Source: Camelus ferus
Lineage: Eukaryota
Direction: 5' to 3'
DNA: 64,000 nucleotides
NCBI RefSeq assembly: GCF_009834535.1
Contig: NC_045706.1
Span: 38,874,001-38,938,000 of the forward strand
The notes under the pieces: model-generated
Seen by the model: the letters and a program-made list of their open reading frames with translations, nothing else
Told to the model about the DNA's origin: nothing
The model's database searches: none
Translations under genes and position numbers: made by a program
Part shown: positions 20,231 through 36,449 of the stretch, piece after piece
Position numbering within the stretch: the stretch's first letter is position 1
How the letters are laid out: every line of letters starts with the position of its first letter

Positions 20231-22119
20231 TCTTCATCTAATATTTTTCATCCAACATTTCTGTGTTCAAAATGTGTTCTCAAATTCCTAATAACTCATA
20301 TGACACTGTTGTTTATTTCATTTTTTTTATAATTACCCTAACAACTTCATTCAGCTTCATAAAATCTCTGCATATTTTAAGCCATGATACAGTAAGGCAG
20401 AGTGATACAGTGGAGGGACCTAGAGTTAAGGGGGAGAAAAGGGGGGTTGTGGGGGAGGGTGTCAGCCCACTTTGCTATTTGGCATTTGAGGAAGTTCTTT
20501 GCCAAACCATACTTTATTAATTTATAAACTCAGTATGTTGGACCTGATGATTCATAACATGTGGTACAGATCTGTGATTCAAGACCACGCAATTTTAAAC
20601 CAGAAGTAGACATTGGCTTCAAATCAAGAATTAACAGCAGTCATTTGGCAATAGATTTTTATGTGAATAAGGATTTGATTACAGATCTGGAAAAGGATGG
20701 TGTGTTCAGGATGTGGAATAGCTGAAGAGTGGTTATCTGTGTCACACAATTGTCACATCTGCAGTAGATTTAACCAGGAAGGAAAAGAAAAAGATAAAGA
20801 AACTTTTAGTAATAGAAAAGAACTTGAATCCAAGCAATAAAAGCCATTTAAATTTAAGAACTATTTTGCATATTACACTTCAAGTCTTTCAGAGAAGATA
20901 ACATAAATTCTTCCTGGTTGTTGTAGAATGGATTTCATGACCATTTGCTTAAAATCTAGAGATTCTAAAAAACCCCTGAAATATCGCACTTATTTTTCTT
21001 AAAAGCCCTTAGAAAATTTATTTTGAGTGACATACAAAATATAAAATAGGTACTGTTAGTCAGAAGAATAAATTTATATTTCAGGAAAATACCAGTGTAT
21101 GACAGAGCTCTTCAATTGAGGAAAAAAATACTTTTTTATGAAAAGATATTCTAAGTCACTATATTTATCAGGGTCATTTCTTAAACCTAAGTACTCATCT
21201 AATAAAATACTGTGATTCATTTTTTCTTTCAAGATAAGGACACAAACATGTTCAAGGGAAGGCATGATCTTTGATTTTTTCAAAATTGTTTTAAATTAGT
21301 AAAAGATGGGCATAAAATCCTGGAAACAGCTGCTAAGTGAATGGTTTTGTTTGTGACCAAAATAATTAATATATGACTTTGCAGAAAGCCTTGTGAGTAT
21401 TTTGCATAACAAGATGCTCAACGAATGGCCACTTCAGAGCATTTGGATATTATAAATCATTACAATACCAGTTTGAAATCTAATACTCAGCATGCTACAA
21501 TAACTCCATGAAATTATTTTTGGCATAGTTCAAGAGCATGCATCTCGTCATTACTTTTTCCTGCTGAGAGGGCTCACACAGAACACACCATTCTTTAAAT
21601 TACGTTTTAGGGAATATTTATGGTATCATTATAATGTAACAAAAAAGTCAAGACAAGAACGAGAGATGAGTTTATGTCTGTTAAAACAAAAGCAGGTTTA
21701 AATATACATTGTATTAAAAGACATATCTCTTTTAGATCGTCTTTGCTTGAATTGTTTTTTGCAAGATGGAGACAGCTTCACAAGTTCTAAAAGCCTTGTA
21801 AATACATAGCTCTACAAAAAGGATTTATCTTACGCAAACTTAAGCAACAGTCAGCTTGATCACTGCAGAGACCAGTGGTTGCTTAGTTCACTTGGATTCC
21901 AGTTCATTCTTTCTCAAACAGTTATGTAACTACATTTGACCAATGCTGGAGAAATGTTTGAATTCCTGTAGGTAACTGATTATGCTTTATAACTGGCAAT
22001 AAAGAAAATCCACTGTATTATTCCTAGCTACCTTTTTAATATTCTTCTTTACCTCCAGGGGCCACTGAATTTCTGTATTTAAACTGGCAAAGCCCCAGTA
22101 AGATCTTAGTGAATGACTA

Positions 22120-22676
22120 TGTTATGGAGGTCAAGTTACAAAATAGAAATCGGATTTGCTTCTGGGTTACAAAGATTATATGAATATGTATATGTCTTTG
22201 TGCCTGTAACGGGATGTGGATAAAAGAGACTGTACATGCAAATACCTTTCCTAAAGGAGGGTAATAGCTCACATGCCATCCATCGCTCTGCAGCCTTCCT
22301 AGATTTAGCTAGTATTGGGAAAGCATAGGTAAATTCATAGCTGAAATTGTTAAATTAATTTAACAAGGAGGCCATTGGGCTGAGACTGATAGGCTTAGAT
22401 TTGGGTTTGCTTACCTAGGAGACCTCAGTGTTAGAGCCTGTCAACGACACAAAGTTACAGAATCCAAACGTTATGGAGAATCAATCCCAAACAGCCTTAG
22501 CTGATCAATAATGTTCTTACTTCACTTACGCCTTTTCTCTATAAAGCTCTCTCCTCAAGCTCCTGTTAGTAAAGTGTTCCTAATCATTTCCAGTTTGGTG
22601 TTGCCCCGTGTGAATTAATCAATGAGCAAATAAACTTTGAAGGTTTTTAATATGCCTCAGTTTATCCTTTTTAAAA
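22120..22676 (+). mobile_element. ERV1-class solo LTR
   Basis: Starts TGTTA; TATA-like TATAAA; AATAAA near 22628; ends TTTAATATGCCTCAGTTTATCCTTTTTAAAA, an ERV1-type terminus; flanks ACTA/ACTC are a near-TSD. Confidence 0.6.
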
Positions 22677-22856
22677 ACTCACGTGACACTTTTTAATGTG
22701 TATTTTTTAAATACGTAAGTAGTTGAAGGTTTTAATATGCTTTGTCTTCCTAAAATTGTCTTCTTTACTTTGTTTCCATCACCTTTATGACTTTCTATAT
22801 AATAACTATGTTTGTTATTTTTTGTACACTTATTTTCTCAGTTAGTAGTATGACTT

Positions 22857-23246
22857 TCAAGGGGGTAGAATAGGCCACCTCAAAATACGCCACTTTGGCA
22901 TAAGGATTAATTTGAGCTAAAGGCCCTAAGAAAAATTGCAAAAAGCAGAAGAACACTCTAAATTTTATCCTTTACTTAAAAGCAGGAGATGAACCTCCCA
23001 TTTGAAAGATGTCCTCTCTGTTCCAGAAGGAAAGTAACATTCTTATTATCAACAAGAGAGAGAAGTTGAGACCAGGAGGATTCCTGTATAGTAGATCTGT
23101 TAAAATAATTCTTATTTTCCTTTAGTCTCTCCACATAGTTATTTTCATACTTGCTTCTCTTTGTTCAACCTATTATAAAAGCAGGCAGGTTTTGCTCAGG
23201 TGAAAACCCCTAAGAAGGCAGATGCAAAACATTTGCCTCCCCTATA
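22857..23246 (+). mobile_element. MER34-like ERV1 LTR
   Basis: AGAATAGGCCACCTCAAAATACGCCACTTTGGCATAAGGATTAATTTGAGCTAAAGGC is the characteristic MER34-family 5' end; ends TTTGCCTCCCCTATA. Confidence 0.75.
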
Positions 23247-23749
23247 CTTTCATCTTACAGCATTTGACATAAATGTTAAATGATTACACACTGAAAATAC
23301 CTGCATTTATTTTTCTTCCTTTAAACTTCAAGTTTATTCTTTAGTAACATGAAGTTCATTTTTATTTACTTTTGTATTAGAATATTTACACCAATTTTTT
23401 AAATCTATCTGAATTGATCTTGATGTAAGGTATTGATGGGTCCAAAATATGAATTATTGCATTCAAAATTTTCTTATTTCACACTTTGCACTATAGTTTG
23501 CCAACTCCTCATGGAAACCACAACATCTAATTTTACAGACAAATATGTTGATCTTTGTTACAGAAGTAGAACTGAATTCTCACATCTGTACTAATGGAAT
23601 ATTACTGTGTAACTACTCCAGACTACCATGACATGAAATCTATTTTACAACTGATACTTGCTTATTTTTAATTTTACATGGTACATTTTAGTTTGGAATT
23701 TAGATGTGAAAAATACTACCAAATTGAATTAAATACAGCCAGTCAAAAT

Positions 23750-25190
23750 CCTCCAAAAATCTAAAACTGAGGTAAGGTGTGTGGAAGATGGAAAGAACCA
23801 CAAGACACAAACCCCTGTTCTTGGAGCGTTCACCAGTCTAGGAGCTAAGTAGGCTCTTGTTCATGTACAACTATAATTTAAGTCAATACAATAAATCATC
23901 AGAACACTGTCAACAACTAAAGAGATTCAGGGAGCTAAATAATCAGGAAGACGTCATGAAATGGCTTCAAAGAACACTAAGAAGTTGGATAGGACAGATG
24001 GTAAGATTCATAAGAGAAGTACAAAGTAAAGAGAGGAAATCAGAATCAAATACCAAAGGTAGGAAAATATGAGACCTATTTGATAATTCTCAGATAATGT
24101 AGTTTCACTCCAGTTGTACAGGTTGTGGAAAGGTTGGGGGACAGATTATAAAAGGTCTACCTAAAATGCCTCAAGAGCCTGGATTCTATACCTTTGAGAT
24201 GGGAGATTTTAAGTTGACTGTTTCTAGTAAGAGATTGATCAGTATTGATCTGGAAAATTAAGCCATTGGCAGAAAGGCAAATTCATTATAAAAGGGGAGA
24301 AAAGCTAAGAGGTAGCTGCATTCATTCACTCATTGATTCACTTAGTTATCCATTCAGCAGGGATTTATTAAATACCCGCTGTGAACCAAGCACTGTTCTG
24401 AGTTTGCACTCACAGAAATTAACAGACTATGATAACATGGTAAGATTTCTCTGTCATAAATGGGATGTGAAGATGTTTTTCTACTACGACAATAACAAAA
24501 ATACAGAGAAAGCATAAAATAGATTGCAAATTTGGGTGCACATTTATAAAATTGGCTTCAGGGGAAAAACATAGTGAAAGTAAATCAAATGCCATGCTGC
24601 AAAAATATTTACAACTCACATTTCAGTCCCAGAGTTCATTTCCCTAAAATACCGAAAATCCCTGTGGATAAATAAGACTAATCACATCATAGACAAATGG
24701 GCAAGGTATTCAACTGTTTCCCACTCTGTCTCACAGTATTGATTTGATGTTCCTCTTACCCTTTTCAGGTACTTCAAAACATTTTTTTCTTAACTGTTTT
24801 AGGTAAACATTCATATGGCAATTATTCTAGTCCAGATTTCTGTTAGCCCATTGGGAACTTTTTGCTGCTTGGTTACCAATGGAATATTATTGTGCAACTA
24901 TTCTTGAGTGCTTACATTCTAGTGAAGGTAGACACTCATTCAGAAAAGAAAAAATAGAGCAAAAATGCTTCTAAATTTGAAGGAAATTGGCTTTTAAGAG
25001 ATTATATGAGGGTCTAAGAGACTCAGGCTCGGAATTGGGACTTACTTCAGACAGTATGGCAAGGCAGAGTGGTCTGGTAAAGCGATATTTAAACTGAGGC
25101 CTAAAATACGTGAAGACAGTAGACATCTGAGGGAAAGACCACTGCAGGCAACAAGAATAAGACAAGTTAAAGCCATGCTCGGTAAGAAAA
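23750..25190 (-). mobile_element. Fragmented L2 LINE cluster
   Basis: CATTCATTCACTCATTGATTC...TTATTAAATACCCGCTGTGAACCAAGCACTGTTCTG near 24320 and purine-rich antisense L2 pieces on both sides. Confidence 0.5.
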
Positions 25191-25232
25191 AAAAAACAGT
25201 CTGAAATTCTATGGTTTATGATTCATTGAGTT

Positions 25233-25400
25233 GTTTTTGTTTTGTTTTGTTTTAATTGAGTTACAGTCAGTTTACAATGTTGTATCAATTTCTGGTATAC
25301 AGCACAGTTTTTCAGTCATACATGAATATACATATATTCGTTTTCATATTCTTTTTCATCATGAGCTACGGTAAGATCTTGAATATATTTCCCTGTGCTA
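25233..25400 (-). mobile_element. Young lineage-specific (camelid-like) 5'-truncated L1 with TSD
   Basis: (TTTTG)n tail then AATTGAGTTACAGTCAGTTTACAATGTTGTATCAATTTCTGGTATACAGCA...GAATATATTTCCCTGTGCTA; flanked by CATTGAGTT (25224-25232) and CACTGAGTT (25401-25409), 8/9 identical. Confidence 0.8.
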
Positions 25401-26629
25401 CACTGAGTTTTGATAAGCACATTTAAATAATTGTTTGCCTTTGTTTTTAATTCTGAAAGTGTTTAATTCTGAAAGTTTAAAATCATTTTGAGATGTTTTC
25501 ATTAAACGTTTTGCATCAATTTCTCCATAGCTATAGTCTTCGAAACAGAAAATTCATGACAAGTTTTCTAAAGTGTATTTTCACAAAGAAAGAAAACAAA
25601 AATCATTATATATAACATAAAATGACATTTTTTTCTGTTCTAGTAATTAGTCTTTAAGTGGTATTTTATATTAATTTTTGTAGTATTTAAGATATTAATA
25701 GTTGACAATATTGAGTTAACTAGACTCTTCAGCTTATCATCATTAAACAAATGAGTTTTCCAAAGTAATTTACTGAGTTCCATTTAAACTGTGTGTTTAA
25801 TTTGCATGCTTTTATTAAGAAATACTAACTGATGATTCTTTTCTATTTCTGATAATACTGCATTGTGGGTCTCAGTTACACATTAGGACAAAATAGGCAC
25901 CTTAATCATAATTATATCAGACTGGGCATTTGTTTGCATATAACTTGTGGTTTATAGGAACTTAATCATTAACCTTTCTCATATGTTATATTTTAAGGAC
26001 TATTCTAAATTTACTGACAATAATCATCTGAGAGTACTAATATTTTTAAAATTTTAGAGCCATTTAAAGTAGAAGGCTAAAATTTGACAACCCTACATCA
26101 ATCCAAATGTTATTTTGTATTATAAGTGCATATACGGCAGTATAATTATTTTTATATTCTGTTTATGTTTAACTATTTAAGGATAGAGTGCATGAAATTT
26201 AGTTTTAAAATAGTTTTATGATTATTTGAAGCTCAATATTCCTTTGAAGTCTTTTTTTCTTATGAAAGAAAATAATTTTTATTTAATAGGTATTTAAATA
26301 GTCATCTATCATTTACAAATTTTAGGCGGTAAAAGGAAGATCATCTTTGGCATTATGAGGTTCAGTGCTTTTCCAGTATAGGGATACTTACTTCATGTGT
26401 AGTCTCCAAGAAAAGTTAGTAACCCTGCCATATGAGATATTTTATTTTTAGATATTTGGAAACAAAACAAAACTCTACACATAGAAGTGAATAAAAGTAA
26501 CTGCAAAAAATTAAATCTGACTTCAGAATGTTAACTTACCTGATGCCCTACCTCTCTGTGTATGACAGTAAGACAGACATATTTTCTTACCACCTAAACA
26601 CACACACACACGTTTGCACATGCACACAA

Positions 26630-26880
26630 CATATAGTGCTTAATAATACAGATTCTGGAATCAAACTACCTGGAATAAGTCTTGGCTCTGTCCCCGAATA
26701 GCTGTAAACTCAGACAGGTCATTTAACCTCTCTGTCTTCCCTGTCCTCAACCGTCAACAGATCTGTAAAGCACACCCCACGCTGCTGTAGAATTAAATGA
26801 ACTGGTGTACGTACATTACCTAGAACCGTGCCTCATAAATAATAATCTCTAAGAAAATGTTAAATAACATTACTACTACC
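26630..26880 (+). mobile_element. MIR SINE, unusually CpG-rich
   Basis: TAGTGCTTAATAATACAGATTCTGGAATCAAACTACCTGG...CTTGGCTCTG...TCATTTAACCTCTCTGT...AATTAAATGA...TAGAACCGTGCCT is collinear with MIR. Confidence 0.75.
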
Positions 26881-27089
26881 ATTTTAATACACAGCAGGAG
26901 AAAGTCTGCGGAGAGAAGACAGGACAAAACTGGGGTTCTGCTGGGAGGAAAAGACATGATTTAACTTTTGTTAGTAGAAATGAACTGAGTTCAGTCAAGT
27001 TAGGAATTCACCCCGCAAGACTGTGTGACAAAAAGCAGCCAGGATAGCGAGATAAAGACTAAAAGGCAAGTAACTTTTTGTGACTTTAA

Positions 27090-27400
27090 GGGCAAAGTGA
27101 GCAGGAGCAGAGCGGCGATGCGCCCCCCAGAGTCAGTGGCGCGGGACGGAGGTGCCCGGACGCGTGCACATCCCCGCGGAGCAGCGGCGGGTGTACCTGC
27201 CAGGCTTCCCCAAGCCGAAGAGAGAGCGGAAGACGGCAGCCCTGGAGGAGGTCACACAGCGGATGGAGGAGGAACAGAAGCTCCAGGAGGAGCGCCACCG
27301 GGAACACTGGAAGATGCCGGGGGAGAGGGAGGCGGCGCTGGAGGAGGCAGACAGCTGGGCTGGCTGGTGACGGCAAAGAGTCCGTGCAGGGTAACACCCA
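27090..27400. promoter_or_regulatory. CpG island over the 5' end of the NOL12 retrocopy
   Basis: Manual count of 24 CpG in 27101-27400 at roughly 70% GC, versus about 4 CpG in 25500-26500. Promoter activity is not shown. Confidence 0.72.
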
Positions 27401-27740
27401 ACTACACGGTCACTGCAATGACCATGGAGCCACCTCTTGGGGGTCCGGCTGCTCCGACTGCGCTGCATGGAACAAGGGGTCGGACACAGGTCTAAGGAAG
27501 CGGAGTCATTCACGGAGAAGCCAAACCGAGCCTCACCCAGGAAGTGCAGGGACCCCGGCTAGGCTACTCTTAAGGATGTCCTCTCACGCAACACTACGTG
27601 CGCATGCTCAGTCGCAAAGAGGTCAAGAGCAAACACCTGTCACGGCCCAGGACTCCACCGAGAAACCCAGAGTTGATACTCATACTTTCAAGACCCAGCG
27701 CTGCCAGCTAACAGGTAAAACCTGGCACAGCTGGGAATCA
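27118..27740 (+). pseudogene. NOL12: Processed pseudogene (retrocopy) of nucleolar protein 12; frameshifted, intronless, ancestral stop lost
   Basis: Translations match recalled NOL12 across its length in different frames. ATG 27118 gives MRPPESVARDG vs MGRNKKKKRDG (RDG at the same codons 9-11). EQRRVYLPGFPKPKRERKTAALEEVTQRMEEEQKLQEERHREHWKMPGEREAALEEAD vs [65 protein letters not shown] vs RLVTAK; PNYTVT vs PNHTVT; FTEKPNRASPRKCRDP vs STEKPTKALPRKSRDP; AQDS...KTQRCQLTGKTWHSWE vs AQDS...KAQRRRLTGKARHSGE*. No introns although the parent is multi-exon. TCA at 27738-27740 occupies the stop position. Confidence 0.93.
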
Positions 27741-29510
27741 GCCTGCCCAGCCCTGGGTGCTGGCACCTGTCCTGTCTCAGCGTGGCCGTTCCCGGAACCG
27801 CTCGCATGAAGGTGATGACTCCACAGCCAAAGGTTGGGATGCCAGGACCTCTTAAGAAGGAGCAGGCAGCTAAGAGCCGGCTTCTTGGGGAGCAACCTTC
27901 AGAGCCAAGTTTGGGGCCTCTTTCCAAGGGCAGGCTTTTGGGGTGGTAGGAATGGTCAGAGAGAGAGGGTCCATCCTCACTCCCTAACAGTTTTCCCTGT
28001 GGCAGTAGGAGAAGTAAGTTTAGATCTGGACTTGCTAACAAGAGTTGGAGACCAGTGTTACTACTGGTAGAATCCAGAGTTCACCTGCTTCCCTGAAAAT
28101 TGGACAGCTGGGGCAGGGCGGGAGAGCAGTACCCAGCTCTGCCCTTCACTGGCTGAGACTTTGGGCCTGTCCCTTCTTCTTGGCTTTGTGGGTCTCCTCA
28201 GCTGAAACTGAAGTTATAGAAGCAGATGAGTTCTAGAGAATTCCCCTTCTCCAAACTTGGCAGCTTCCCCAGGCTTCCAACAGATCCCAGACAGAGTCTA
28301 ACAAAGGAGTGATTAATCCTTTCTAAAGAAAATACATCTTGACCCACCTGTAAATGTTTTGTAAGGGTTGCCCTTTCTTCATGCTCCTTCCAGAGAGATA
28401 TTCAGGTGGGGCTTCAAAGATGATGAAAACTAGCCTTGTTTCGTCCTTGTCCTAGCTTGTGAGTGACTCACCTCATTCATACACCCCAGGGTTCTCCTGA
28501 TTGAGCAGGGCCATTGGCAAGATCGAGGTCCACCTGTGGCAGGTACCAGTGAGGACAACCAGAGCACCTCTTCTGGAGCATGGCCACTTACTGGCTCCTC
28601 TGATTCTGGGCTGTGCCCTGCTCAACTCTAAAAGTAGGGCTACAAAGGGACATAAGATGTACACTCATCCCTGGTGAAGCCTGTGGACTAGTGAGAGAGA
28701 TGGTCAAGGTGACAGGACACTGCTGTGATGGGAGTACAGCTGCAGATTCTACCAACCTTGGGCAAAACCCTTAGAGGGCACCTGGAGGAGAGGGAGAAGG
28801 AAGCTAGAGTCTGCAGGGCAGGCCTTCTGCTTCTTCTCCTCCACCCCCCTCTCCCCCATGGAGGGCCTGCCTGGAGCAGCCCCGCCCACCCCCCATTGCG
28901 CAGGCTCAGGAAAGGCTCCTCAGTTAGGCTGTGCCTGGGGGTGGACAGGTGCTCTCCCCTGTCATCATCCAAACCCACTATCTGATAATGTCTGATGGCT
29001 AATGCATGTCTGCAGGCCACATCTGGGTGTGGAACAGGAAGCTTAGGGCTTGTCACTGGGAGGCCCCTTGACCTGACTTTTCAGTTTCTTCTACCTGTTC
29101 TTCCTGCTGCCTCCACTGTCCTTCCCTTTGCTAGGGGTGAGGTGACTGCTCTACTTGGCTGCCTCCAGCCTGGGCAGAGGGTGGGGCCTATTACTGAGCT
29201 CTCCATGTGGTTCTGTTACTCAATCCCAGGCAGTGAGTGTGAGCTTTGTCCTCACAGGCCCCTGTGAGCATGAACAGAGTGGGCCCTGGGGATCAGTACG
29301 CGTGGCTGGGTTTGAATCCTGGCTCTGCCCCTTGGTCACTTTTTTGCTTCTTGTTGGGCTGACCTCTCTGGGTCTAGTTCTCCTTGTGTAAAATGAAGTA
29401 AGGCATCTACCTCTTAGGGCTGCCCTGAGGCTGAAATGAGACCATGTACATGAACCACTTCCCACAGCACCTGGCCTTCCCCAGTGCACGTGCCTTCAGT
29501 GCGTTGTACT
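27741..29510 (+). pseudogene. GC-rich block continuous with the NOL12 retrocopy, probably the retrotransposed NOL12 3'UTR
   Basis: Sequence stays visibly GC-rich from the ancestral stop to about 29510, then drops abruptly to the AT-rich background. Homology to the NOL12 3'UTR is inferred, not aligned. No clear poly(A) tail or target-site duplication seen. Confidence 0.6.
29290..29480 (+). mobile_element. MIR SINE inside the retrocopy 3' block
   Basis: GCTGGGTTTGAATCCTGGCTCTGCC...TGACCTCTCTGGGTCTAGTTCTCCTTGTGTAAAATG...CTACCTCTTAGGGCTG...AAATGAG...CAGCACCTGGC. Confidence 0.8.
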
Positions 29511-32500
29511 GTGCACTATACTATTGTAATTGCTTTTAGAGAACTCACTTTAAACTAAGTCAAAATCTTTTCAGTTATAGAATTAGTATTAAAACTCAAT
29601 TCTTCACATTTCTAATAGAACATTTTGCATTACACCATTTATTATGAATGTTTCATTTAAGAAATATTGTCAAATGTTTCAATGAGCAGTGATAAGACTA
29701 TGATTGAGATTATACAGTTATAAAAATATTCTAGTAGATATTTCCAAATCTTGATAGGCATTGCAAGTTATCACTAATGAAATCAGAAATCTGAGACAAG
29801 TCACAGAAATATCCCTGAAATATGTATACAATGTATTTCTTAAAACAAAGTACTATAAACACCTAATAAATTAACTAAAGAAAAGGAATTAAACTCAAAA
29901 ACTAAAACTCAAACCAAACCTTTACATTGCTCTCTTTCAGGAAAAATAAAAAGGTAACAGTAGAAAAACCTATATTTGTATTTTTCTTTAATTGGAAAAA
30001 TACAGCCTATGGTATCAATGGAATGGTTAAGACATTCTTTGCATCCAGTAAAGTATATTATCATTTTATCTGGTCCAGCCACACATTCTGCTTATCCTGG
30101 ACTGTCCTAGTTTACCCCTACTTTCCTTGAATCACTTTTGTTTAGCCTATGTCCCAGATTTTTCATTTTTTAACAAAATGTTACTATTTGTAGTTATATA
30201 AAAACATGTCAGGATTATTTTGGTTGATGCCCCACTTTGTTATTCCAACTGTGAAAACACAAATGTTTGAAGAACAATATTCTCACTTTAACATACGGTT
30301 AAATATGCTGTAAGGCACATGTCTTTTCCTGATCCTTTCCAGACAAGTTAACTCCAACCAATATTTCAGACAGCATGTACAGCCCTCCACTGGGAAAAAG
30401 AATACAGTGAGAAAAGTATTCAAAGCTATTATCCAAGGCCCCTGCCCCCAGCTAGGTCGAAGAGCCAGCTGTGGCATGGGCTTGGCCACGGTCTGTGAGA
30501 TGCATAACATCACAAGGCACAGCTGGCAGCTGGTGGGATCAGCATGAAGTTAGAGAATTACAGTTTTGGTGGATGTGAGATAAATATAGGGAACACAGAT
30601 GCCACGGTCCTGCCATCGAGCAAATGGAGAGTTAGCCTGAGGCTTATTACACAGGACTGGTCATTTATTGTTCTGTGTAAATCAAAATGAATGTTCATTT
30701 ACTTAGTATTCAGTGATTATTTAATTTTTAGCCATAAACCCTTTCTGCAGCAATAGCCCAACCCCCCCAAAGTACATATGTAATGAAAAAATAATAACTG
30801 AATTTCCATTTCTTACGAATGTTGGTGTCACTTGTACACAATGTTTGTCGACATTTACTGGATTTATCACTGGCCACAAGCAAAGCAGAAGAAAAAGATA
30901 AAATTGCTAAAGAAGCAGTAGCACCAGTTCCATGAGTAAAGAGCTATACTGCTACGACTATGCCCTAAAACAAAGGTTTAATACGTACAGTTGCCTAAGG
31001 TGTATTTACAGACAATTCATGAAGCATGATAATTGTATTCAGATCAAATGAGATACTGAACTACAAATTTCTGAGACAAATGTCTGAGCGGTGTGCAGCT
31101 CATCTTTTTGGCAGCTCTTCATTAATCGTATGTTAGAAATATTTGAGCCTTTGATTAACCACTTTGTAAAACAACTTAGGTGTCCTAAAATAATACTGTG
31201 TCTTTCTAGAAGCTAGCCCTCTAAACTGTGTTTGCATTTTGTTTAAAAAATATAACCTTGGAATCTTCATTAAAATCACCCAGTGAGTACAACAATAAAT
31301 AAATAAAATTTGGGAGCGTCTAGTGTATTATAATTATGAATAATAAAGACGACAGAGAGGAAAAGATATATAAATGTAGCCCTACAAAATTATGGGGGGG
31401 ATTGAACAAGTTAAAATAATGAAAAGTCAAAGAGTAAGATTTTACTTTGAAATTCTATAAATGCTCTTTAGATACCTTATAGAAAAAAAAAAAAACCTTT
31501 CAATGGTGCTTCCATTTTTAATTGCATAAAATATTTTCTGTACTTGAATAGAAAAACTTGACAAGTTTCTTATTTTTTTCCAGCATCTAAGTTTGGCAAA
31601 ACAGTCAAAAGACTCATATGCAGAGGTAATATATATCTAATACTATTATGTAAAATTATTTTCCAAAAGAAGTCACCTAAATAAAGGAAAAGGACAGTGC
31701 CTGGGAAATTCTTTGGACTGAAAGATGAACACATTTTAATATAAAAATTGTATTGAGATTTGCCTTCATTTAGTGGAATTTGTTTCAGGCTTACCTTGGA
31801 ATTTTTAAGGAAAGAATTTCTCAATTACAAATTAATAGTCTACAGGGAAGAGTCAAAGATAAGCAATTTTACATTTGTTAATCACAAACTAGAACTTAAG
31901 AAAAGATTGAAGCCTATTTTGGTAAATATATTAAAAATATATTAAAGATAAGACAATGCTGAAAAAATAATGTTCTTTATAAAAATACTGTAAATGTGAT
32001 TTTAGATAGAGATGTAAAGGATGGATTAAAGTATATGAAAATTCACCAGTAGTAATACTGTTATATTTTTATAGATAGATAAACTCAGATAAATAGATCT
32101 TTTTTCTGCTTTATATAGATGAATACATGTTTATTTTTTAGACAGTTTTACTGTCCAAAAATTCTAAAAGTTTATTTCATAAATCTAACACTATGATTAA
32201 AATAAGTATGATTAATAAATATAATCACGTTTACTATCTTTTACTCTCAGGAGTGTCCTAGTATGGACAATATATTATGGGTTCACTTTAAATTCATCAG
32301 TTGGCTGAACAGACAGCTAATATAACACCACCGAAAACATTCTGTCTCCACAGATGCCAGTACACATTTCCCTGAACTTATTTTGAAAAAAATTAAAGCC
32401 ACAGAAAAGTCATACCACATATGTCCATATATTTTCACTAAGAATTATCAATTTTTAATATTTTGCAGCCTATTTTCTCTTCTTTATATATGTACACATA

Positions 32501-32739
32501 TATACCTATATTCCTTTATTCCTGGATAATTTACAGTTAAGTTGCTAATAGCACAGCACTTCACCACTAAATTAGAGTCATTAGGAATTCTTTTGTGCCT
32601 CAGAATTTAGCTTGTGATCAAGTTAAGCAAGCCTACACTTTGGTACAGAGTCATTAAAATCATCTCAGCATTAAGGTTATAATTAATAAATTATAATCAC
32701 CTTCAGCATTACATTACTTAATAGGTGAATAAATTTATT

Positions 32740-33860
32740 TCCCCCTATTTGATAAATATTTACTGAGAACCTGTTATGCCAGTTTCTCTATTTAATAAGT
32801 GATGAACATAACAGTCAAGTCTATACACACAAAGGTCTTAAATTTACTGAGTTGTGACAAACAGGAAATAAATTAATAAGCATATAATATATCATTAAGA
32901 GCTTTGAAGAAAAATAAACCAGGGCAAGTTAATTATTAACAACTGGAGGTACTGTCTCAAATAAGAGTATGTAAGCTAGGCCATTCTTTGGAGTTACATT
33001 TGAACATAAACTTGAAAGAAGTGAAAGTGTCAGTCATATGAACATCTGGCAGTACAATGCCATAGTCCAAGGGAGCATCAAGTGCAAAGGCCTTATTGAA
33101 GCGTAAGTTTTATTTGATTGAGGACGAGTAAGAGGGTGATGTAGCCTGAAGAAAGAAAATGATGGAGAATTGCACAGGTGATGATGCCAGAGCAGCTGCC
33201 AGGTTGGAGGGGATCACACAAGGCCTTTTAATCATTGTTCAGACCTGGATCTCAGGGCGTGCAAACTACAGCTCTTGGGCCAAAGGCAGCCCGTGGATTG
33301 CTTTGGATGGCCTATGAAGCCAGTAATTTTTTTGTTGTTCTACGTTTTCAAATGTTTGTTAATAAAACATCAAAAGCAAAGGAAAAAAACATGTAGCAGA
33401 GACTATATGTGAACCAGGAAGCCTAAAATATTTACTTTCTGGCCCTTTCCAGAGGAAAAAAATGGCAACTCTGGATTGAAAGTCACTAGGATTTGAGAGT
33501 TGAAGAGTCACATACTCTTATTTACATTTTATGATGATTATTCTGAGGGTTGTGGTGAACATATTCTGCAGATGAGCAGGAGCAGAAGCAGGAAGATGTG
33601 TTAAGATGCTGTGGCAACAGTCCAGGCATCAGGTGGTGATGGCTAGTCTGGGGCGGTAGCCTTGGAGCAGCCAACAATTGGCTGGATTTGGGATATAGTT
33701 TGAAGGCAAATCCAGCAGAGTTTGCTGATGGTATGGTGTATGAGGAAAAGAGAACAGTCTAGGATAAGCCCTAAAACTGTAGACTGAATGTATTAATTTA
33801 TTACAATGTATTAATTTTCCTGAGAAGGGAGGACCCATAATGGACATTTTTTGACTGTGT
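32740..33860 (-). mobile_element. L2 LINE (interrupted by MER58)
   Basis: Begins GATAAATATTTACTGAGAACCTGTTATGCCAG (antisense L2 3' end); purine-rich L2 body continues to about 33850. Confidence 0.7.
33250..33475 (+). mobile_element. MER58B-like hAT-Charlie DNA transposon
   Basis: CAGGGCGTGCAAACTACAGCTCTTGGGCCAAA...GCAGAGACTATATGTG...AAGCCTAAAATATTTACTTTCTGGCCCTTTCCAGA. Confidence 0.75.
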
Positions 33861-34814
33861 TCAGATTTGCAAAATTTTTTTCTCCCTCTAGAATTAAACT
33901 CTTCTTGCAGATTCTATTATTTCCATATACTTTTTGTTAAAAACGGAGAAAGAAAGCTGCTATAGCAAATGAATGCAGAAAACATTAAGTTATAAAAAGT
34001 TATCATCTTTCTTAATTACTATTGTTTAATATATTTCCATTTTAATCATCAGTTTCTTTCTCTGATGCTGAATTTCACAATAACAGCTTAAGAGGGCAAG
34101 TGTGTTTTGTGAAAAACATCGAAAATAACAGTCATATTCACTTTAAATACATTTTGTCATCTTACTGCATCTCTACTGGAGTTAAAGAACTGTTTCTGCT
34201 CATGTATTCATGTAGTCTATAAACATTTTCCCATTCTGCAGAGCTAATCTGAACTAATCATTTCCCAGTTATATTAGCCACCATGAGACAATTTCCCAAA
34301 GCTTTATGGTATCTGCTTTTGAAAAAGTAAAAGTCCTTTAATGCTGATAGTTCCACTTTCTTAAAAAACTCAATAGCCTTTGCTATACTCTTTTCTTATA
34401 TTAAAAAAAAACCCTAATTTCTAATCATATCAATCTCTGTATCTCTCCTGTATTTTTTTCAGGAGAATTCGTTCAACCATTTGCTTCCTGAAGGACTTTT
34501 AAGTTGGCCAGTATCTTAGAAAAGAGTTACTGGGATATATGATGAAATATCATACTCAACAATTTTTTAAAAAGAAGAAAAAATCTTAAGAGAAAAGTAA
34601 CTATTCATATCAAAGAAATCTCTCATATTATTGCTCTAACTAGGTATTCTCCTGTCAAGAGATTATCATAGTGTGGCTATGACTCTGACAGCACTCATAT
34701 GGCAAACAGTCGGAGGGACGGCTACTGCTTCCAACATTAGCGGCCATTCCATCATGGCGGGTAGGTAGCTTACGTCCCCGTGGATCAACTGTATTCCTAT
34801 GCATTGATGACTGT

Positions 34815-35410
34815 AATAACCACTTGGTTCAAACATTTTGAAAAATAGGGCAGTATCTACTAAAACTCCAAAACTAAAGATAGGCCTATCCTACAATCCA
34901 ACAATCCAAATCAGCAGTATATAGATATGCAAAAGGAAAGTAAAAGAATGTTCATATCAGCTTTATTTGCCATAGGCCAAACTGGCAACTATCTGAATAG
35001 TCACCAGAAAGAACATGGAAAACAAACTATGGTCTATTCAAACATTAAAGAAGCGAAGGAACTTCTGATTTACCCAATATGGATGGATTACATGGCCTTT
35101 ATGTTGAGCAGAAGAAGCCAGATACAAGTTAGCATATTGTGCATGATTCTATTTGTATGGAATTCAAGAACAGAGAAAACTAATCTAAGCTGGTAATAGT
35201 CAAAATGGTGTTACGCATTATGATGGGATATTAGATCTGAGGTTATAAAGAAAACTCTTAGAGTCACAGAAGCGTCAGTATCTTGATTTGAATAGTACTT
35301 ATGGGATACAAGAGAATTTATCCAGGAATATGTATGTGGAAAATGCAGCAAATTGTTGAGAAAAGGCAATATTTCATTTTATGTAAGTTATGATTTAATA
35401 AAAAAATTAT
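34815..35410 (+). mobile_element. Old L1 (L1ME-like) 3' fragment
   Basis: GGCAGTATCTACTAAA...AAGAATGTTCATATCAGCTTTATTTGCCATAGGCCAAACTGG...AGAAGCCAGATACAA...TGCATGATTCTATTTGTATGGAATTCAAGAACAG. Confidence 0.75.
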
Positions 35411-36449
35411 GTACAGCAGTTTACACAGTACCTGGAATATAGTAAGTGCAAGAGATGATAGCTATGGACGAATATGTGTCACCTAAAACCTTCAGAAATG
35501 AATGTCTGGTTACATTTAGACAAAAGTTAATATCAAATAGTCAGAGGAAGATTAATTTTAATAATTTAATAACTGGCTAAATGTTCTATAAGCTATGTAT
35601 CATACATAGATGTTTAGGGTATCATCTGCACACCAATAAAATATTATGCCATTTAGTTTAGGTAGTAGGAAATTACTGTATATTTAGATAAGGTTCAGAA
35701 ATTTAAGAGAAAAATAATTTACCATCCATCAATGAGACTGATGAAATGCTTGATGAAACTTTAGTGCCGAAAGCATGAGATTTGATATGATAGACAGATT
35801 AGGCACTTCTCTAAATGGCTGACTCACAAAATCAATTCTCTCATTTTTTTTTGACACAAATAGAAATGAAGATCAGATGCAATCCATTGCATTTAATATA
35901 TCGTTTGATTAACCTGTTTTGATAGATGTCCTATAGCATCCCTCCTCCAGCAAAGAATATACAAGGTTTTTTTAAAATTAATATAGTTTCACATTTTGAG
36001 CCAGATTTACTATAATTAACAGGTGAACATAACAGAGATATTAATATATTTTTTCTTGTTTTGATCCAGTCTTGGATTAACCATCTCAAGAGATTAGAGA
36101 CTATAATTTTTCATTTGCTACTAAACATCTTTATTATAGTTTAAGACTAAATTTTTATTTTCGTGACATATGTGACATAAAAGTGCTAGGGAAAAGCACT
36201 TTTGCATATGCAATCTCACTTTTTACCCACTTTCCCATCAGTACTTTTCCAGGTATAGATATATATTTATATATAATTCACTTAGACATCACTTGTCTCC
36301 CTGAGTTAATTAGCTACTTCAGAATTTCTAGTGAACATAAGGTTCCAAATATCTTAACACATATTTTTCTTTTTACCCTTCTAGCATCCCCTTATCATTT
36401 TAGGTGACATGTGCACTTCATTATCTCAGGCATGTAGTATTAGGAAACT

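What the first reader, a model, noticed from the sequence alone, without database searches (positions are those of the whole stretch)
27118..27740. NOL12 retrocopy evolves toward GC at its 5' end and decays normally at its 3' end: likely GC-biased gene conversion footprint
Seen: across about 62 aligned codons (roughly 27172-27352) most amino-acid changes from recalled NOL12 need A/T->G/C substitutions, many of them A->C transversions. These are E->A twice, K->Q, T->P, H->P, K->T twice, I->L, I->V, K->E, Q->R, Y->H, L->P and L->W: about 14 toward GC against about 2 toward AT (L->M, R->Q). The AAG lysine run after the ATG has also become GC-rich. The 3' end shows the usual decay (R->C CGC->TGC, R->W CGG->TGG, A->T, S->F). 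Established: neutral pseudogenes drift toward AT through CpG deamination, and hypomethylation alone preserves CpG but does not create A->C changes, whereas gBGC at recombination hotspots does. Inference: a strong, long-lived hotspot sits at the retrocopy 5' end and has built a CpG island in an AT-rich region.
Basis: partly seen in the sequence, partly recalled or inferred. Interest (0 to 1): 0.75.

Follow-up and report, generated by a model that had tools for sequence, protein, structure and literature searches.

The report
Old NOL12 retrocopy turned CpG island
An ancient, dead, intron-free copy of the nucleolar gene NOL12 in a camel genome gained G and C bases in its first 300 bases and now looks like an active CpG-island promoter. 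This is a clear example of a process already described at mammalian gene starts, not a new one.

Summary
Window 27100-29500 is a full-length, intronless NOL12 retrocopy: exons 1-6 plus about 1.8 kb of 3'UTR. It sits at the same syntenic position in narwhal, so it predates the camel-whale split.

I polarised changes against seven placental NOL12 genes, including vicuna, the closest available stand-in for the camel's own gene.
- 27353-27740: 20 against 46 (Fisher p=2e-4).
- 3'UTR: 14 against 36.

None of the 24 derived bases in exons 2-3 is in vicuna NOL12. Independent DNA runs confirm the bases.

- The skew is strand-symmetric and confined to about 300 bases. It is significant only on the branch shared with narwhal (9:4 against 8:36, p=0.001), so it is an ancient burst, not a demonstrably long-lived hotspot.
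- RNA-seq contigs cover 27125-29509, and 26820-27810 meets CpG-island criteria.
- The best fit is promoter-type (PRDM9-independent, TSS-linked) GC-biased gene conversion on an island seeded by the parent's CpG-rich exon 1.
- Whether the ATG at 27118 is the old start codon cannot be decided.

The scan met the same pattern before in this genome (MED25 and RPL18A retrocopies).

The parts
27100..27188 (+). Part of the retrocopy derived from the NOL12 5'UTR and exon 1. It is very GC- and CpG-rich and broken up by indels. Its 5' boundary is approximate.
   Evidence: Exon-wise MSA and pairwise alignments give three different alignments. Narwhal keeps about 46 nt clearly homologous to the NOL12 5'UTR. 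GC is 0.70 and CpG o/e 0.79 for 27101-27300.
27189..27352 (+). Exons 2-3 of NOL12, fused without an intron. This is the core of the W>S-biased tract.
   Evidence: blastn to L002-L005; MSA. W>S 15, S>W 6, GC* 0.79. Five new CpGs gained and 3 of 5 ancestral CpGs kept.
27353..27740 (+). Exons 4-6 (coding part) of NOL12, with frameshifts and stops. Decay is ordinary and AT-directed, but CpG is still partly retained.
   Evidence: (three frames needed). W>S 20, S>W 46. CpG o/e 0.56.
27741..29505 (+). Long NOL12 3'UTR carried by the source mRNA. CpG-depleted, with normal decay.
   Evidence: Colinear blastn matches to the DNA downstream of the NOL12 stop codon in goat, fur seal, gray whale and manatee, ending at window 29480-29504. 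W>S 14, S>W 36. CpG o/e 0.11.
26820..27810 (.). CpG island, the only one in the 64-kb window. It spans about 300 nt of upstream flank and the coding part of the retrocopy.
   Evidence: Windows of 500-700 nt starting between 26818 and 27157 meet GC>=0.55 and CpG o/e>=0.65. No other 200-nt window in the 64 kb meets GC>=0.5 and o/e>=0.6.
27125..29509 (.). Stretch covered by RNA-seq contigs (strand not known). It equals the retrocopy body.
   Evidence: read laying, table 8. X15 contigs lie on 27125-27813, 27792-27961, 27976-28158, 28140-28838 and 28934-29471. X16 contigs lie on 27191-28004 through 29023-29509. Both runs have zero depth on 25583-26358 and 29657-29850.
27070..27105 (.). Upstream block almost identical in camel and narwhal, with a TTTAAG motif about 35 nt before the first RNA contig edge. 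Possible core-promoter element (inference).
   Evidence: Alignment A1.

Best explanation
A full-length NOL12 mRNA with a long 3'UTR was retrotransposed into AT-rich DNA before camels and whales split. The gene tree places the event before the cetartiodactyl NOL12 genes diverged.

The copy died as a gene: it has frameshifts, stops and no conserved start. Its 5' end carried the CpG-dense 5'UTR and exon 1 of the parent's promoter island. I infer that this CpG-dense seed stayed unmethylated in the germline and became a promoter-like site that is now transcribed.

During an early episode, fixation was biased toward G and C in the 200-300 bases just downstream. The most likely cause is GC-biased gene conversion at a promoter-type, PRDM9-independent recombination site. 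This raised GC from about 0.58 to 0.70 and created new CpGs.

In the camel lineage the island has since been maintained, mainly by protection of CpGs (inferred from its high CpG o/e). In narwhal it is eroding.

Shown: retrocopy structure, orthology with narwhal, the polarised and localised W>S excess and its timing, CpG-island status, RNA coverage.

Inferred: hypomethylation, promoter activity and strand, recombination as the cause.
For: - Structure.
- Orthology: the narwhal locus L001 is syntenic over 16 kb, with 13-17% mismatch in the flanks.
- Age: the retro clade (support 100) falls outside the goat+whale+vicuna NOL12 clade (support 100).
- W>S excess: 28:9 against 34:70 at non-CpG sites, p=7e-6. 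Observed 28 against 10.7 expected from the rates in the rest of the copy, P=8e-6.
- Strand symmetry.
- Sharp switch near 27400: sliding windows.
- Timing: stem 9:4 against 8:36, p=0.001.
- Parent exon 1 has CpG o/e 1.57. Camel 5' part: GC 0.70, o/e 0.75. Narwhal: 0.64, 0.54.
- CpG-island criteria met.
- RNA contigs lie on 27125-29509 only, with silent flanks.
- Literature: PRDM9-independent hotspots at hypomethylated promoter-like CpG islands are widespread and conserved in placentals, and are proposed to explain the GC-richness of CpG islands (PMC11161765). Punctuated ancestral gBGC centred just downstream of TSSs (PMC13712754). About half of the novel retrocopy promoters in human lie in CpG islands (PMC4772013).
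Against: - No recombination, methylation, H3K4me3 or TSS data for camels could be consulted.
- On the stem, S>W is not reduced (4 of 72 sites against 36 of 508). Steady strong gBGC would predict a reduction, so an episode has to be assumed.
- Among W>S changes, transversions are slightly over-represented: 16 transversions to 12 transitions, against 12 to 22 in the rest of the copy.
- RNA evidence comes from contigs of one study. It gives no strand, and weak depth also appears at 26747-27134.
- Counts are small: 21 polarised W/S changes in exons 2-3.
Confidence: 0.55

Rival explanations
1. Selection for a new function drove the G/C gains, not biased conversion. The function could be binding sites of a new promoter or first exon of a non-coding RNA expressed in reproductive tissue, or GC-dependent RNA export or stability.
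For: - RNA contigs coincide with the retrocopy.
- A stretch of about 70 nt (27185-27255) differs at only 1 position between camel and narwhal, against 13-17% in the flanks. The 36 nt just upstream of the copy are 35/36 identical.
- W>S rises without a drop in S>W on the stem.
Against: - 50-nt windows with at most 1 difference also occur elsewhere in the copy (28700-28749), so the constraint signal is weak.
- The narwhal copy has 20- and 31-nt deletions in the same region.
- The gains are spread evenly over A>C, A>G, T>G and T>C, and are not concentrated in a motif.
- For human TSSs, selection was judged unlikely (PMC13712754).
Confidence: 0.2
2. A local mutational bias produced the excess of A/T-to-G/C changes, with no fixation bias. 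The source could be hypermutation linked to transcription starts, or error-prone repair at the 5' junction during or soon after retrotransposition.
For: - On the stem, W>S is 5.5 times up while S>W is unchanged. That is what a mutation-rate change predicts.
- There is an unusual share of A>C and T>G transversions.
- A hypermutation peak at TSSs of testis-expressed genes and lncRNAs has been reported (PMC13712754).
Against: - The changes are strand-symmetric, unlike transcription-coupled asymmetries.
- ADAR or APOBEC editing of the template would give only A>G, or only C>T and G>A.
- I know of no process that gives A>C and A>G in equal measure on both strands.
- The mutation spectrum at TSS peaks was not examined here.
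Confidence: 0.15
3. A classical PRDM9-directed recombination hotspot persisted for tens of millions of years at this spot and is still active.
For: Localised W>S clustering.
Against: - The excess is not significant on the camel-only or narwhal-only branches.
- PRDM9-directed hotspots turn over fast, whereas stable hotspots are the promoter-like ones (PMC11161765).
Confidence: 0.07

Closest known systems
TSS-linked / PRDM9-independent ('default') hotspot gBGC at hypomethylated CpG islands (PMC11161765; PMC13712754)
   Same: W>S-biased substitutions confined to a few hundred bases at or just downstream of a transcription start in a CpG island. The signal is ancient and episodic rather than ongoing.
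   Different: The island here sits on a dead retrocopy whose ancestral sequence is known from the parent gene. Each change can therefore be polarised and dated relative to the camel-whale split. Recombination and methylation were not measured.
Retrocopy promoters in orphan CpG islands (Carelli et al. 2016, PMC4772013)
   Same: An expressed retrocopy whose 5' end lies in a CpG island not tied to another gene.
   Different: The copy is not a protein-coding retrogene: its ORF is broken and not conserved in narwhal. Part of the island appears to be inherited from the parent's exon 1 and then extended. That paper left open whether such islands pre-exist or evolve with the retrocopy.
Earlier notes of this scan in the same camel genome: MED25 retrocopy CpG island (s1-149380) and RPL18A retrocopy (s1-149713)
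   Same: A dead retrocopy that keeps or gains CpGs and shows an A/T-to-G/C skew.
   Different: Different parent gene and locus. Here the skew is dated to before the camel-whale split through an orthologous narwhal copy.

Membership tests
Processed pseudogene (retrocopy) of NOL12 | All parental exons present in order, with introns precisely missing | tested here: met
   Exon junctions of goat, fur seal, whale and manatee NOL12 abut at window 27292/27291, 27341, about 27461 and about 27556. Exon 1 is recognisable only loosely.
Processed pseudogene (retrocopy) of NOL12 | Includes the 3'UTR and ends at the mRNA 3' end, with a poly(A) tail and target-site duplications | tested here: inconclusive
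   The 3'UTR is colinear up to 29480-29504. No poly(A) run is left, and the two flanks share only a 7-nt match. This is expected for a very old insertion.
Processed pseudogene (retrocopy) of NOL12 | Located away from the parent gene, and coding frame disabled | tested here: met
   The flanks are AT-rich and unrelated to the NOL12 loci. Three reading frames are needed and stops are present. Nop25 matches only residues 10-54 of the 72-aa ORF.
CpG island | Length >=500 nt, GC >=0.55, CpG o/e >=0.65 (Takai-Jones); or >=200 nt, GC >=0.5, o/e >=0.6 (Gardiner-Garden and Frommer) | tested here: met
   windows of 500-700 nt starting between 26818 and 27157 pass. The 200-nt windows reach o/e 0.94.
CpG island | Unmethylated in the germline | not testable with these tools
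   Only indirect evidence. Camel keeps 3 of 5 ancestral CpGs in exons 2-3 and 3 of 16 in exons 4-6, and the 3'UTR has CpG o/e 0.11.
gBGC tract | Clustered excess of W>S over S>W substitutions relative to neighbouring neutral sequence | tested here: met
   15:6 (exons 2-3) or 28:12 (with exon 1) against 34:82. p=4e-4 and 1e-5.
gBGC tract | Strand-symmetric, affecting all W>S types | tested here: met
   A>C 0.19 and T>G 0.20 per site; A>G 0.14 and T>C 0.15 per site.
gBGC tract | Simultaneous deficit of S>W fixations | tested here: inconclusive
   Whole history: non-CpG S>W 9 against 15.3 expected (P=0.06). On the stem alone there is no deficit: 4 of 72 against 36 of 508.
gBGC tract | Coincides with a recombination hotspot; W>S alleles skewed to high frequency | not testable with these tools
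   No LD map, DMC1 data or population frequencies were available.
Expressed retrocopy with its own promoter | Transcripts that start at the retrocopy's 5' end | tested here: inconclusive
   RNA-seq contigs of two runs from one study cover 27125-29509 and not the flanks. Contigs show neither strand nor true 5' ends, and weak depth is also seen at 26747-27134.

The most novel reading that the evidence does not exclude
The island was born on the retrocopy itself. A CpG-dense fragment of the parent's promoter island, carried in the mRNA's 5' end, nucleated an unmethylated, transcribed site. A short burst of GC-directed change more than about 60 million years ago then extended it by about 250 bases. 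The burst raised W>S about 5-fold and left S>W unchanged.

If this is general, old retrocopies with orthologues in several orders are time-stamped probes with a known starting sequence. They could be used to measure how CpG islands are born, and whether TSS-linked GC gain is conversion or mutation.
Probability: 0.3. Interest if true: 0.5.

Novelty: new member of a known kind. Interest (0 to 1): 0.33.

Why it matters
A retrocopy is a rare case where the starting sequence of a CpG island is known, because it is the parent mRNA. Here an orthologous copy in another order also dates the changes.

This locus shows GC gain confined to about 300 bases next to a probable transcription start. The gain happened mostly in an ancient episode. 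It was followed by maintenance in one lineage (camel) and erosion in another (narwhal).

That supports the published picture of episodic, promoter-linked GC-biased conversion. It does not change that picture. Its value is as a clean worked example, and as a hint that a genome-wide survey of old retrocopies could separate conversion from mutation bias.

Tried and rejected
1. Word search with the 72-aa ORF. It could not reach the 213-aa NOL12 proteins because of the length rule, and found only the narwhal prediction P0001. That prediction turned out to be the orthologous retrocopy.
I then used the big representative search only to obtain a full-length NOL12 for the next word search.
3. Three look-ups gave no DNA: sloth and tree shrew were not on record, and the wombat file was too large.
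4. Exon 1 alignment. MAFFT and pairwise alignments disagree. I therefore dropped my interim claim that ATG 27118 is certainly not the old start codon, and rest the test on exons 2-3.
5. Constraint on 27185-27255. This stretch is suggestive, but similar low-divergence windows occur elsewhere.
6. Camel-versus-narwhal G/C asymmetry along 16 kb of synteny. It is not specific to the locus: 37:17 here, against 51:26 and 50:32 in distant flanks.
7. Target-site duplication and poly(A) tail: not recoverable.
8. Rfam: nothing in 24000-32000.
9. A splice link between the retrocopy RNA and the RNA contigs at 30085-30761: no clean splice signals.
10. An ATG-initiated 126-aa ORF in another frame (from 27118). 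The ATG is absent in narwhal, so I rejected it as a conserved coding gene.

Exons were aligned one by one. Alignment columns were concatenated only inside a script, for the tree. No primate or human contig was fetched, and the N stretches were not touched.

Full report
**What is there**

Window 27100-29505 (+) is a processed copy of NOL12.
- The 72-aa ORF 27152-27367 matches Pfam Nop25. It is 58-65% identical to mammalian NOL12 proteins.
- I fetched NOL12 genomic loci of goat, fur seal, gray whale, manatee, pipistrelle, mole, vicuna and a marsupial and mapped their exons.
- blastn shows that exons 2 to 6 abut in the window without introns. The match then continues for about 1.8 kb along the DNA downstream of the NOL12 stop codon, ending at 29480-29504. 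The source was therefore a long-3'UTR mRNA.
- The coding frame is broken. Three frames are needed and stops are present.
- No poly(A) tail or target-site duplication is left.

**Species and age**

Earlier notes of this scan say the genome is a camel. I did not verify this independently.
- The only hit of the first word search, a 61-aa 'hypothetical protein' of narwhal, is a mis-annotated orthologous copy.
- Its locus L001 is syntenic with window 20299-36000, with 13-17% mismatches in the flanks. It carries the same derived bases.
- In a maximum-likelihood tree, the two retrocopies form a clade (support 100). That clade lies outside the goat+whale+vicuna NOL12 clade (support 100). Its stem is as long as either terminal branch.
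- The insertion therefore predates the camel-whale split, probably by a wide margin.

**The observation**

I aligned exon by exon and aligned the 3'UTR. The ancestral base was taken where at least 6 of 7 placental NOL12 genes agree.

| Region | W>S | S>W |
|---|---|---|
| Exons 2-3 alone, 27189-27352 | 15 | 6 |
| All downstream, 27353-29520 | 34 | 82 |
| 3'UTR, 27741-29520 | 14 | 36 |

- Exons 2-3 are aligned with a single 3-nt gap. Against all downstream sequence, p=4e-4. With unanimous ancestors it is 13:3 against 19:36, p=0.001.
- Without ancestral CpG sites the contrast is 28:9 against 34:70, p=7e-6.
- Using the rates of the rest of the copy as the neutral expectation, the 5' part should have 10.7 W>S changes. 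It has 28 (P=8e-6).
- Implied equilibrium GC is about 0.8 in the 5' part and about 0.45 downstream.
- The switch is sharp, near 27400 (sliding windows).
- GC of 27100-27352 is 0.70, against about 0.58 for vicuna exons 1-3. Exons 4-6 and the 3'UTR are GC-poorer than the parent.
- None of the 24 derived bases in exons 2-3 occurs in vicuna NOL12.
- Contigs of DNA runs from two other studies agree with the window apart from a few single-base variants.

The first, that the native NOL12 carries the same codons, was tested on vicuna NOL12, the closest available stand-in for the camel's own gene.

**What had to be corrected**

- Exon 1 (27100-27188) is so indel-ridden that MAFFT and pairwise alignments give three different solutions. 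Whether the ATG at 27118 is the old start codon, and what became of the lysine run, cannot be settled. Narwhal has no ATG at that place.
- The region was not AT-rich material turned into an island. The source mRNA was 58-66% GC, and its exon 1 has CpG o/e 1.57.

**Timing**

Changes shared by camel and narwhal (the stem) carry the signal.

| Branch | Exons 2-3 (W>S:S>W) | Rest of copy | p |
|---|---|---|---|
| Stem (shared) | 9:4 | 8:36 | 0.001 |
| Camel only | 3:1 | 22:33 | 0.30 |
| Narwhal only | 8:12 | 14:46 | 0.16 |

(All.)

- On the stem, the per-site W>S rate is 5.5 times that of the rest (9 of 52 against 8 of 255). S>W is unchanged (4 of 72 against 36 of 508).
- On the camel branch, W>S is the same as elsewhere and S>W is nominally low (1 of 55 against 33 of 414).
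- The footprint is therefore an old burst, followed in camels by retention of G/C and CpG.
- In narwhal the copy has lost CpGs (o/e 0.54 against 0.75) and has suffered 20- and 31-nt deletions.

**Nature of the bias**

- Per-site rates are equal on the two strands: A>C 12 of 63 and T>G 4 of 20; A>G 9 of 63 and T>C 3 of 20.
- This argues against transcription-coupled asymmetry and against RNA editing of the template. It fits a fixation bias or a symmetric mutational process.
- Transversions are somewhat over-represented among W>S changes: 16 transversions to 12 transitions, against 12 to 22 downstream.

**Context**

- Window 26820-27810 meets both common CpG-island definitions. It is the only such stretch in the 64 kb.
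- Five new CpGs arose in exons 2-3.
- RNA-seq contigs of two runs from one study, labelled reproductive system, match the window at 99% or more. They lie almost gaplessly on 27125-29509.
- Both runs have no depth on 25583-26358 or 29657-29850. The signal is therefore unlikely to be DNA carry-over.
- Contigs give no strand and no true ends. Weak depth also appears at 26747-27134, and further contigs lie at 30085-30761.
- Just upstream of the copy, 36 nt with a TTTAAG motif are 35/36 identical to narwhal. Positions 27185-27255 differ at one site. Similar quiet 50-nt windows occur elsewhere, so this is only suggestive of constraint.

**Explanation**

The best fit is as follows.
- The CpG-dense 5' end inherited from the parent's promoter island stayed unmethylated and became a promoter-like, transcribed site.
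- It then underwent an episode of GC-biased fixation in the 200-300 bases downstream.

This matches published work.
- PRDM9-independent hotspots at hypomethylated, promoter-like CpG islands are widespread and conserved in placentals. They have been proposed as the cause of the GC-richness of CpG islands (PMC11161765).
- In humans, the GC peak just downstream of TSSs is attributed to punctuated ancestral gBGC rather than selection (PMC13712754).
- About half of the novel retrocopy promoters in human lie in orphan CpG islands (PMC4772013).

Rivals that remain open:
- selection for a promoter or RNA function;
- a local W>S mutational bias. This one is favoured by the unchanged S>W rate on the stem.

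A persistent PRDM9-type hotspot is the least likely, because such hotspots turn over quickly and the terminal branches show no significant excess.

**Verdict**

This is a new example of a known process. The scan had already met the same pattern in this genome (MED25 and RPL18A retrocopies). Interest is modest.

Noticed in passing
window 30085-30761: RNA-seq contigs of both RNA runs also lie here. They are separated from the retrocopy's RNA contigs by an uncovered gap at 29510-30084. No clean splice signals are seen at the edges, so it is unclear whether this belongs to the same transcript.
   Followed up: partly
window 27070-27105 and 27185-27255: Two short blocks are almost identical between camel and narwhal (35/36, and about 70/71), while the flanks differ at 13-17%. 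This may reflect constraint from a core-promoter or first-exon element. Comparable quiet windows exist at 28700-28749.
   Followed up: partly
L001 10001-11244 (narwhal, GCA_005125345.1 RWIC01000010.1): The deposited 'hypothetical protein EI555_010194' (61 aa, spliced model) is a mis-annotation of the orthologous NOL12 retrocopy, not a real gene product.
   Followed up: yes
window 25195-25582: A very high-copy interspersed repeat. Summed word depth is above 3e5 in whole-genome runs, and many contig ends pile up here.
   Followed up: no
L001 11775-13271: Narwhal has about 1.5 kb inserted inside the retrocopy's 3'UTR, relative to camel window 28915-28993. It is probably a later transposable-element insertion.
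   Followed up: no
window 27600-27615: In the camel copy the NOL12 sequence CTGCACGCACACAG has become GTGCGCATGCTCAG. This creates a GCGCATGC core that resembles an NRF1 half-site. The resemblance is from memory only and was not tested.
   Followed up: no
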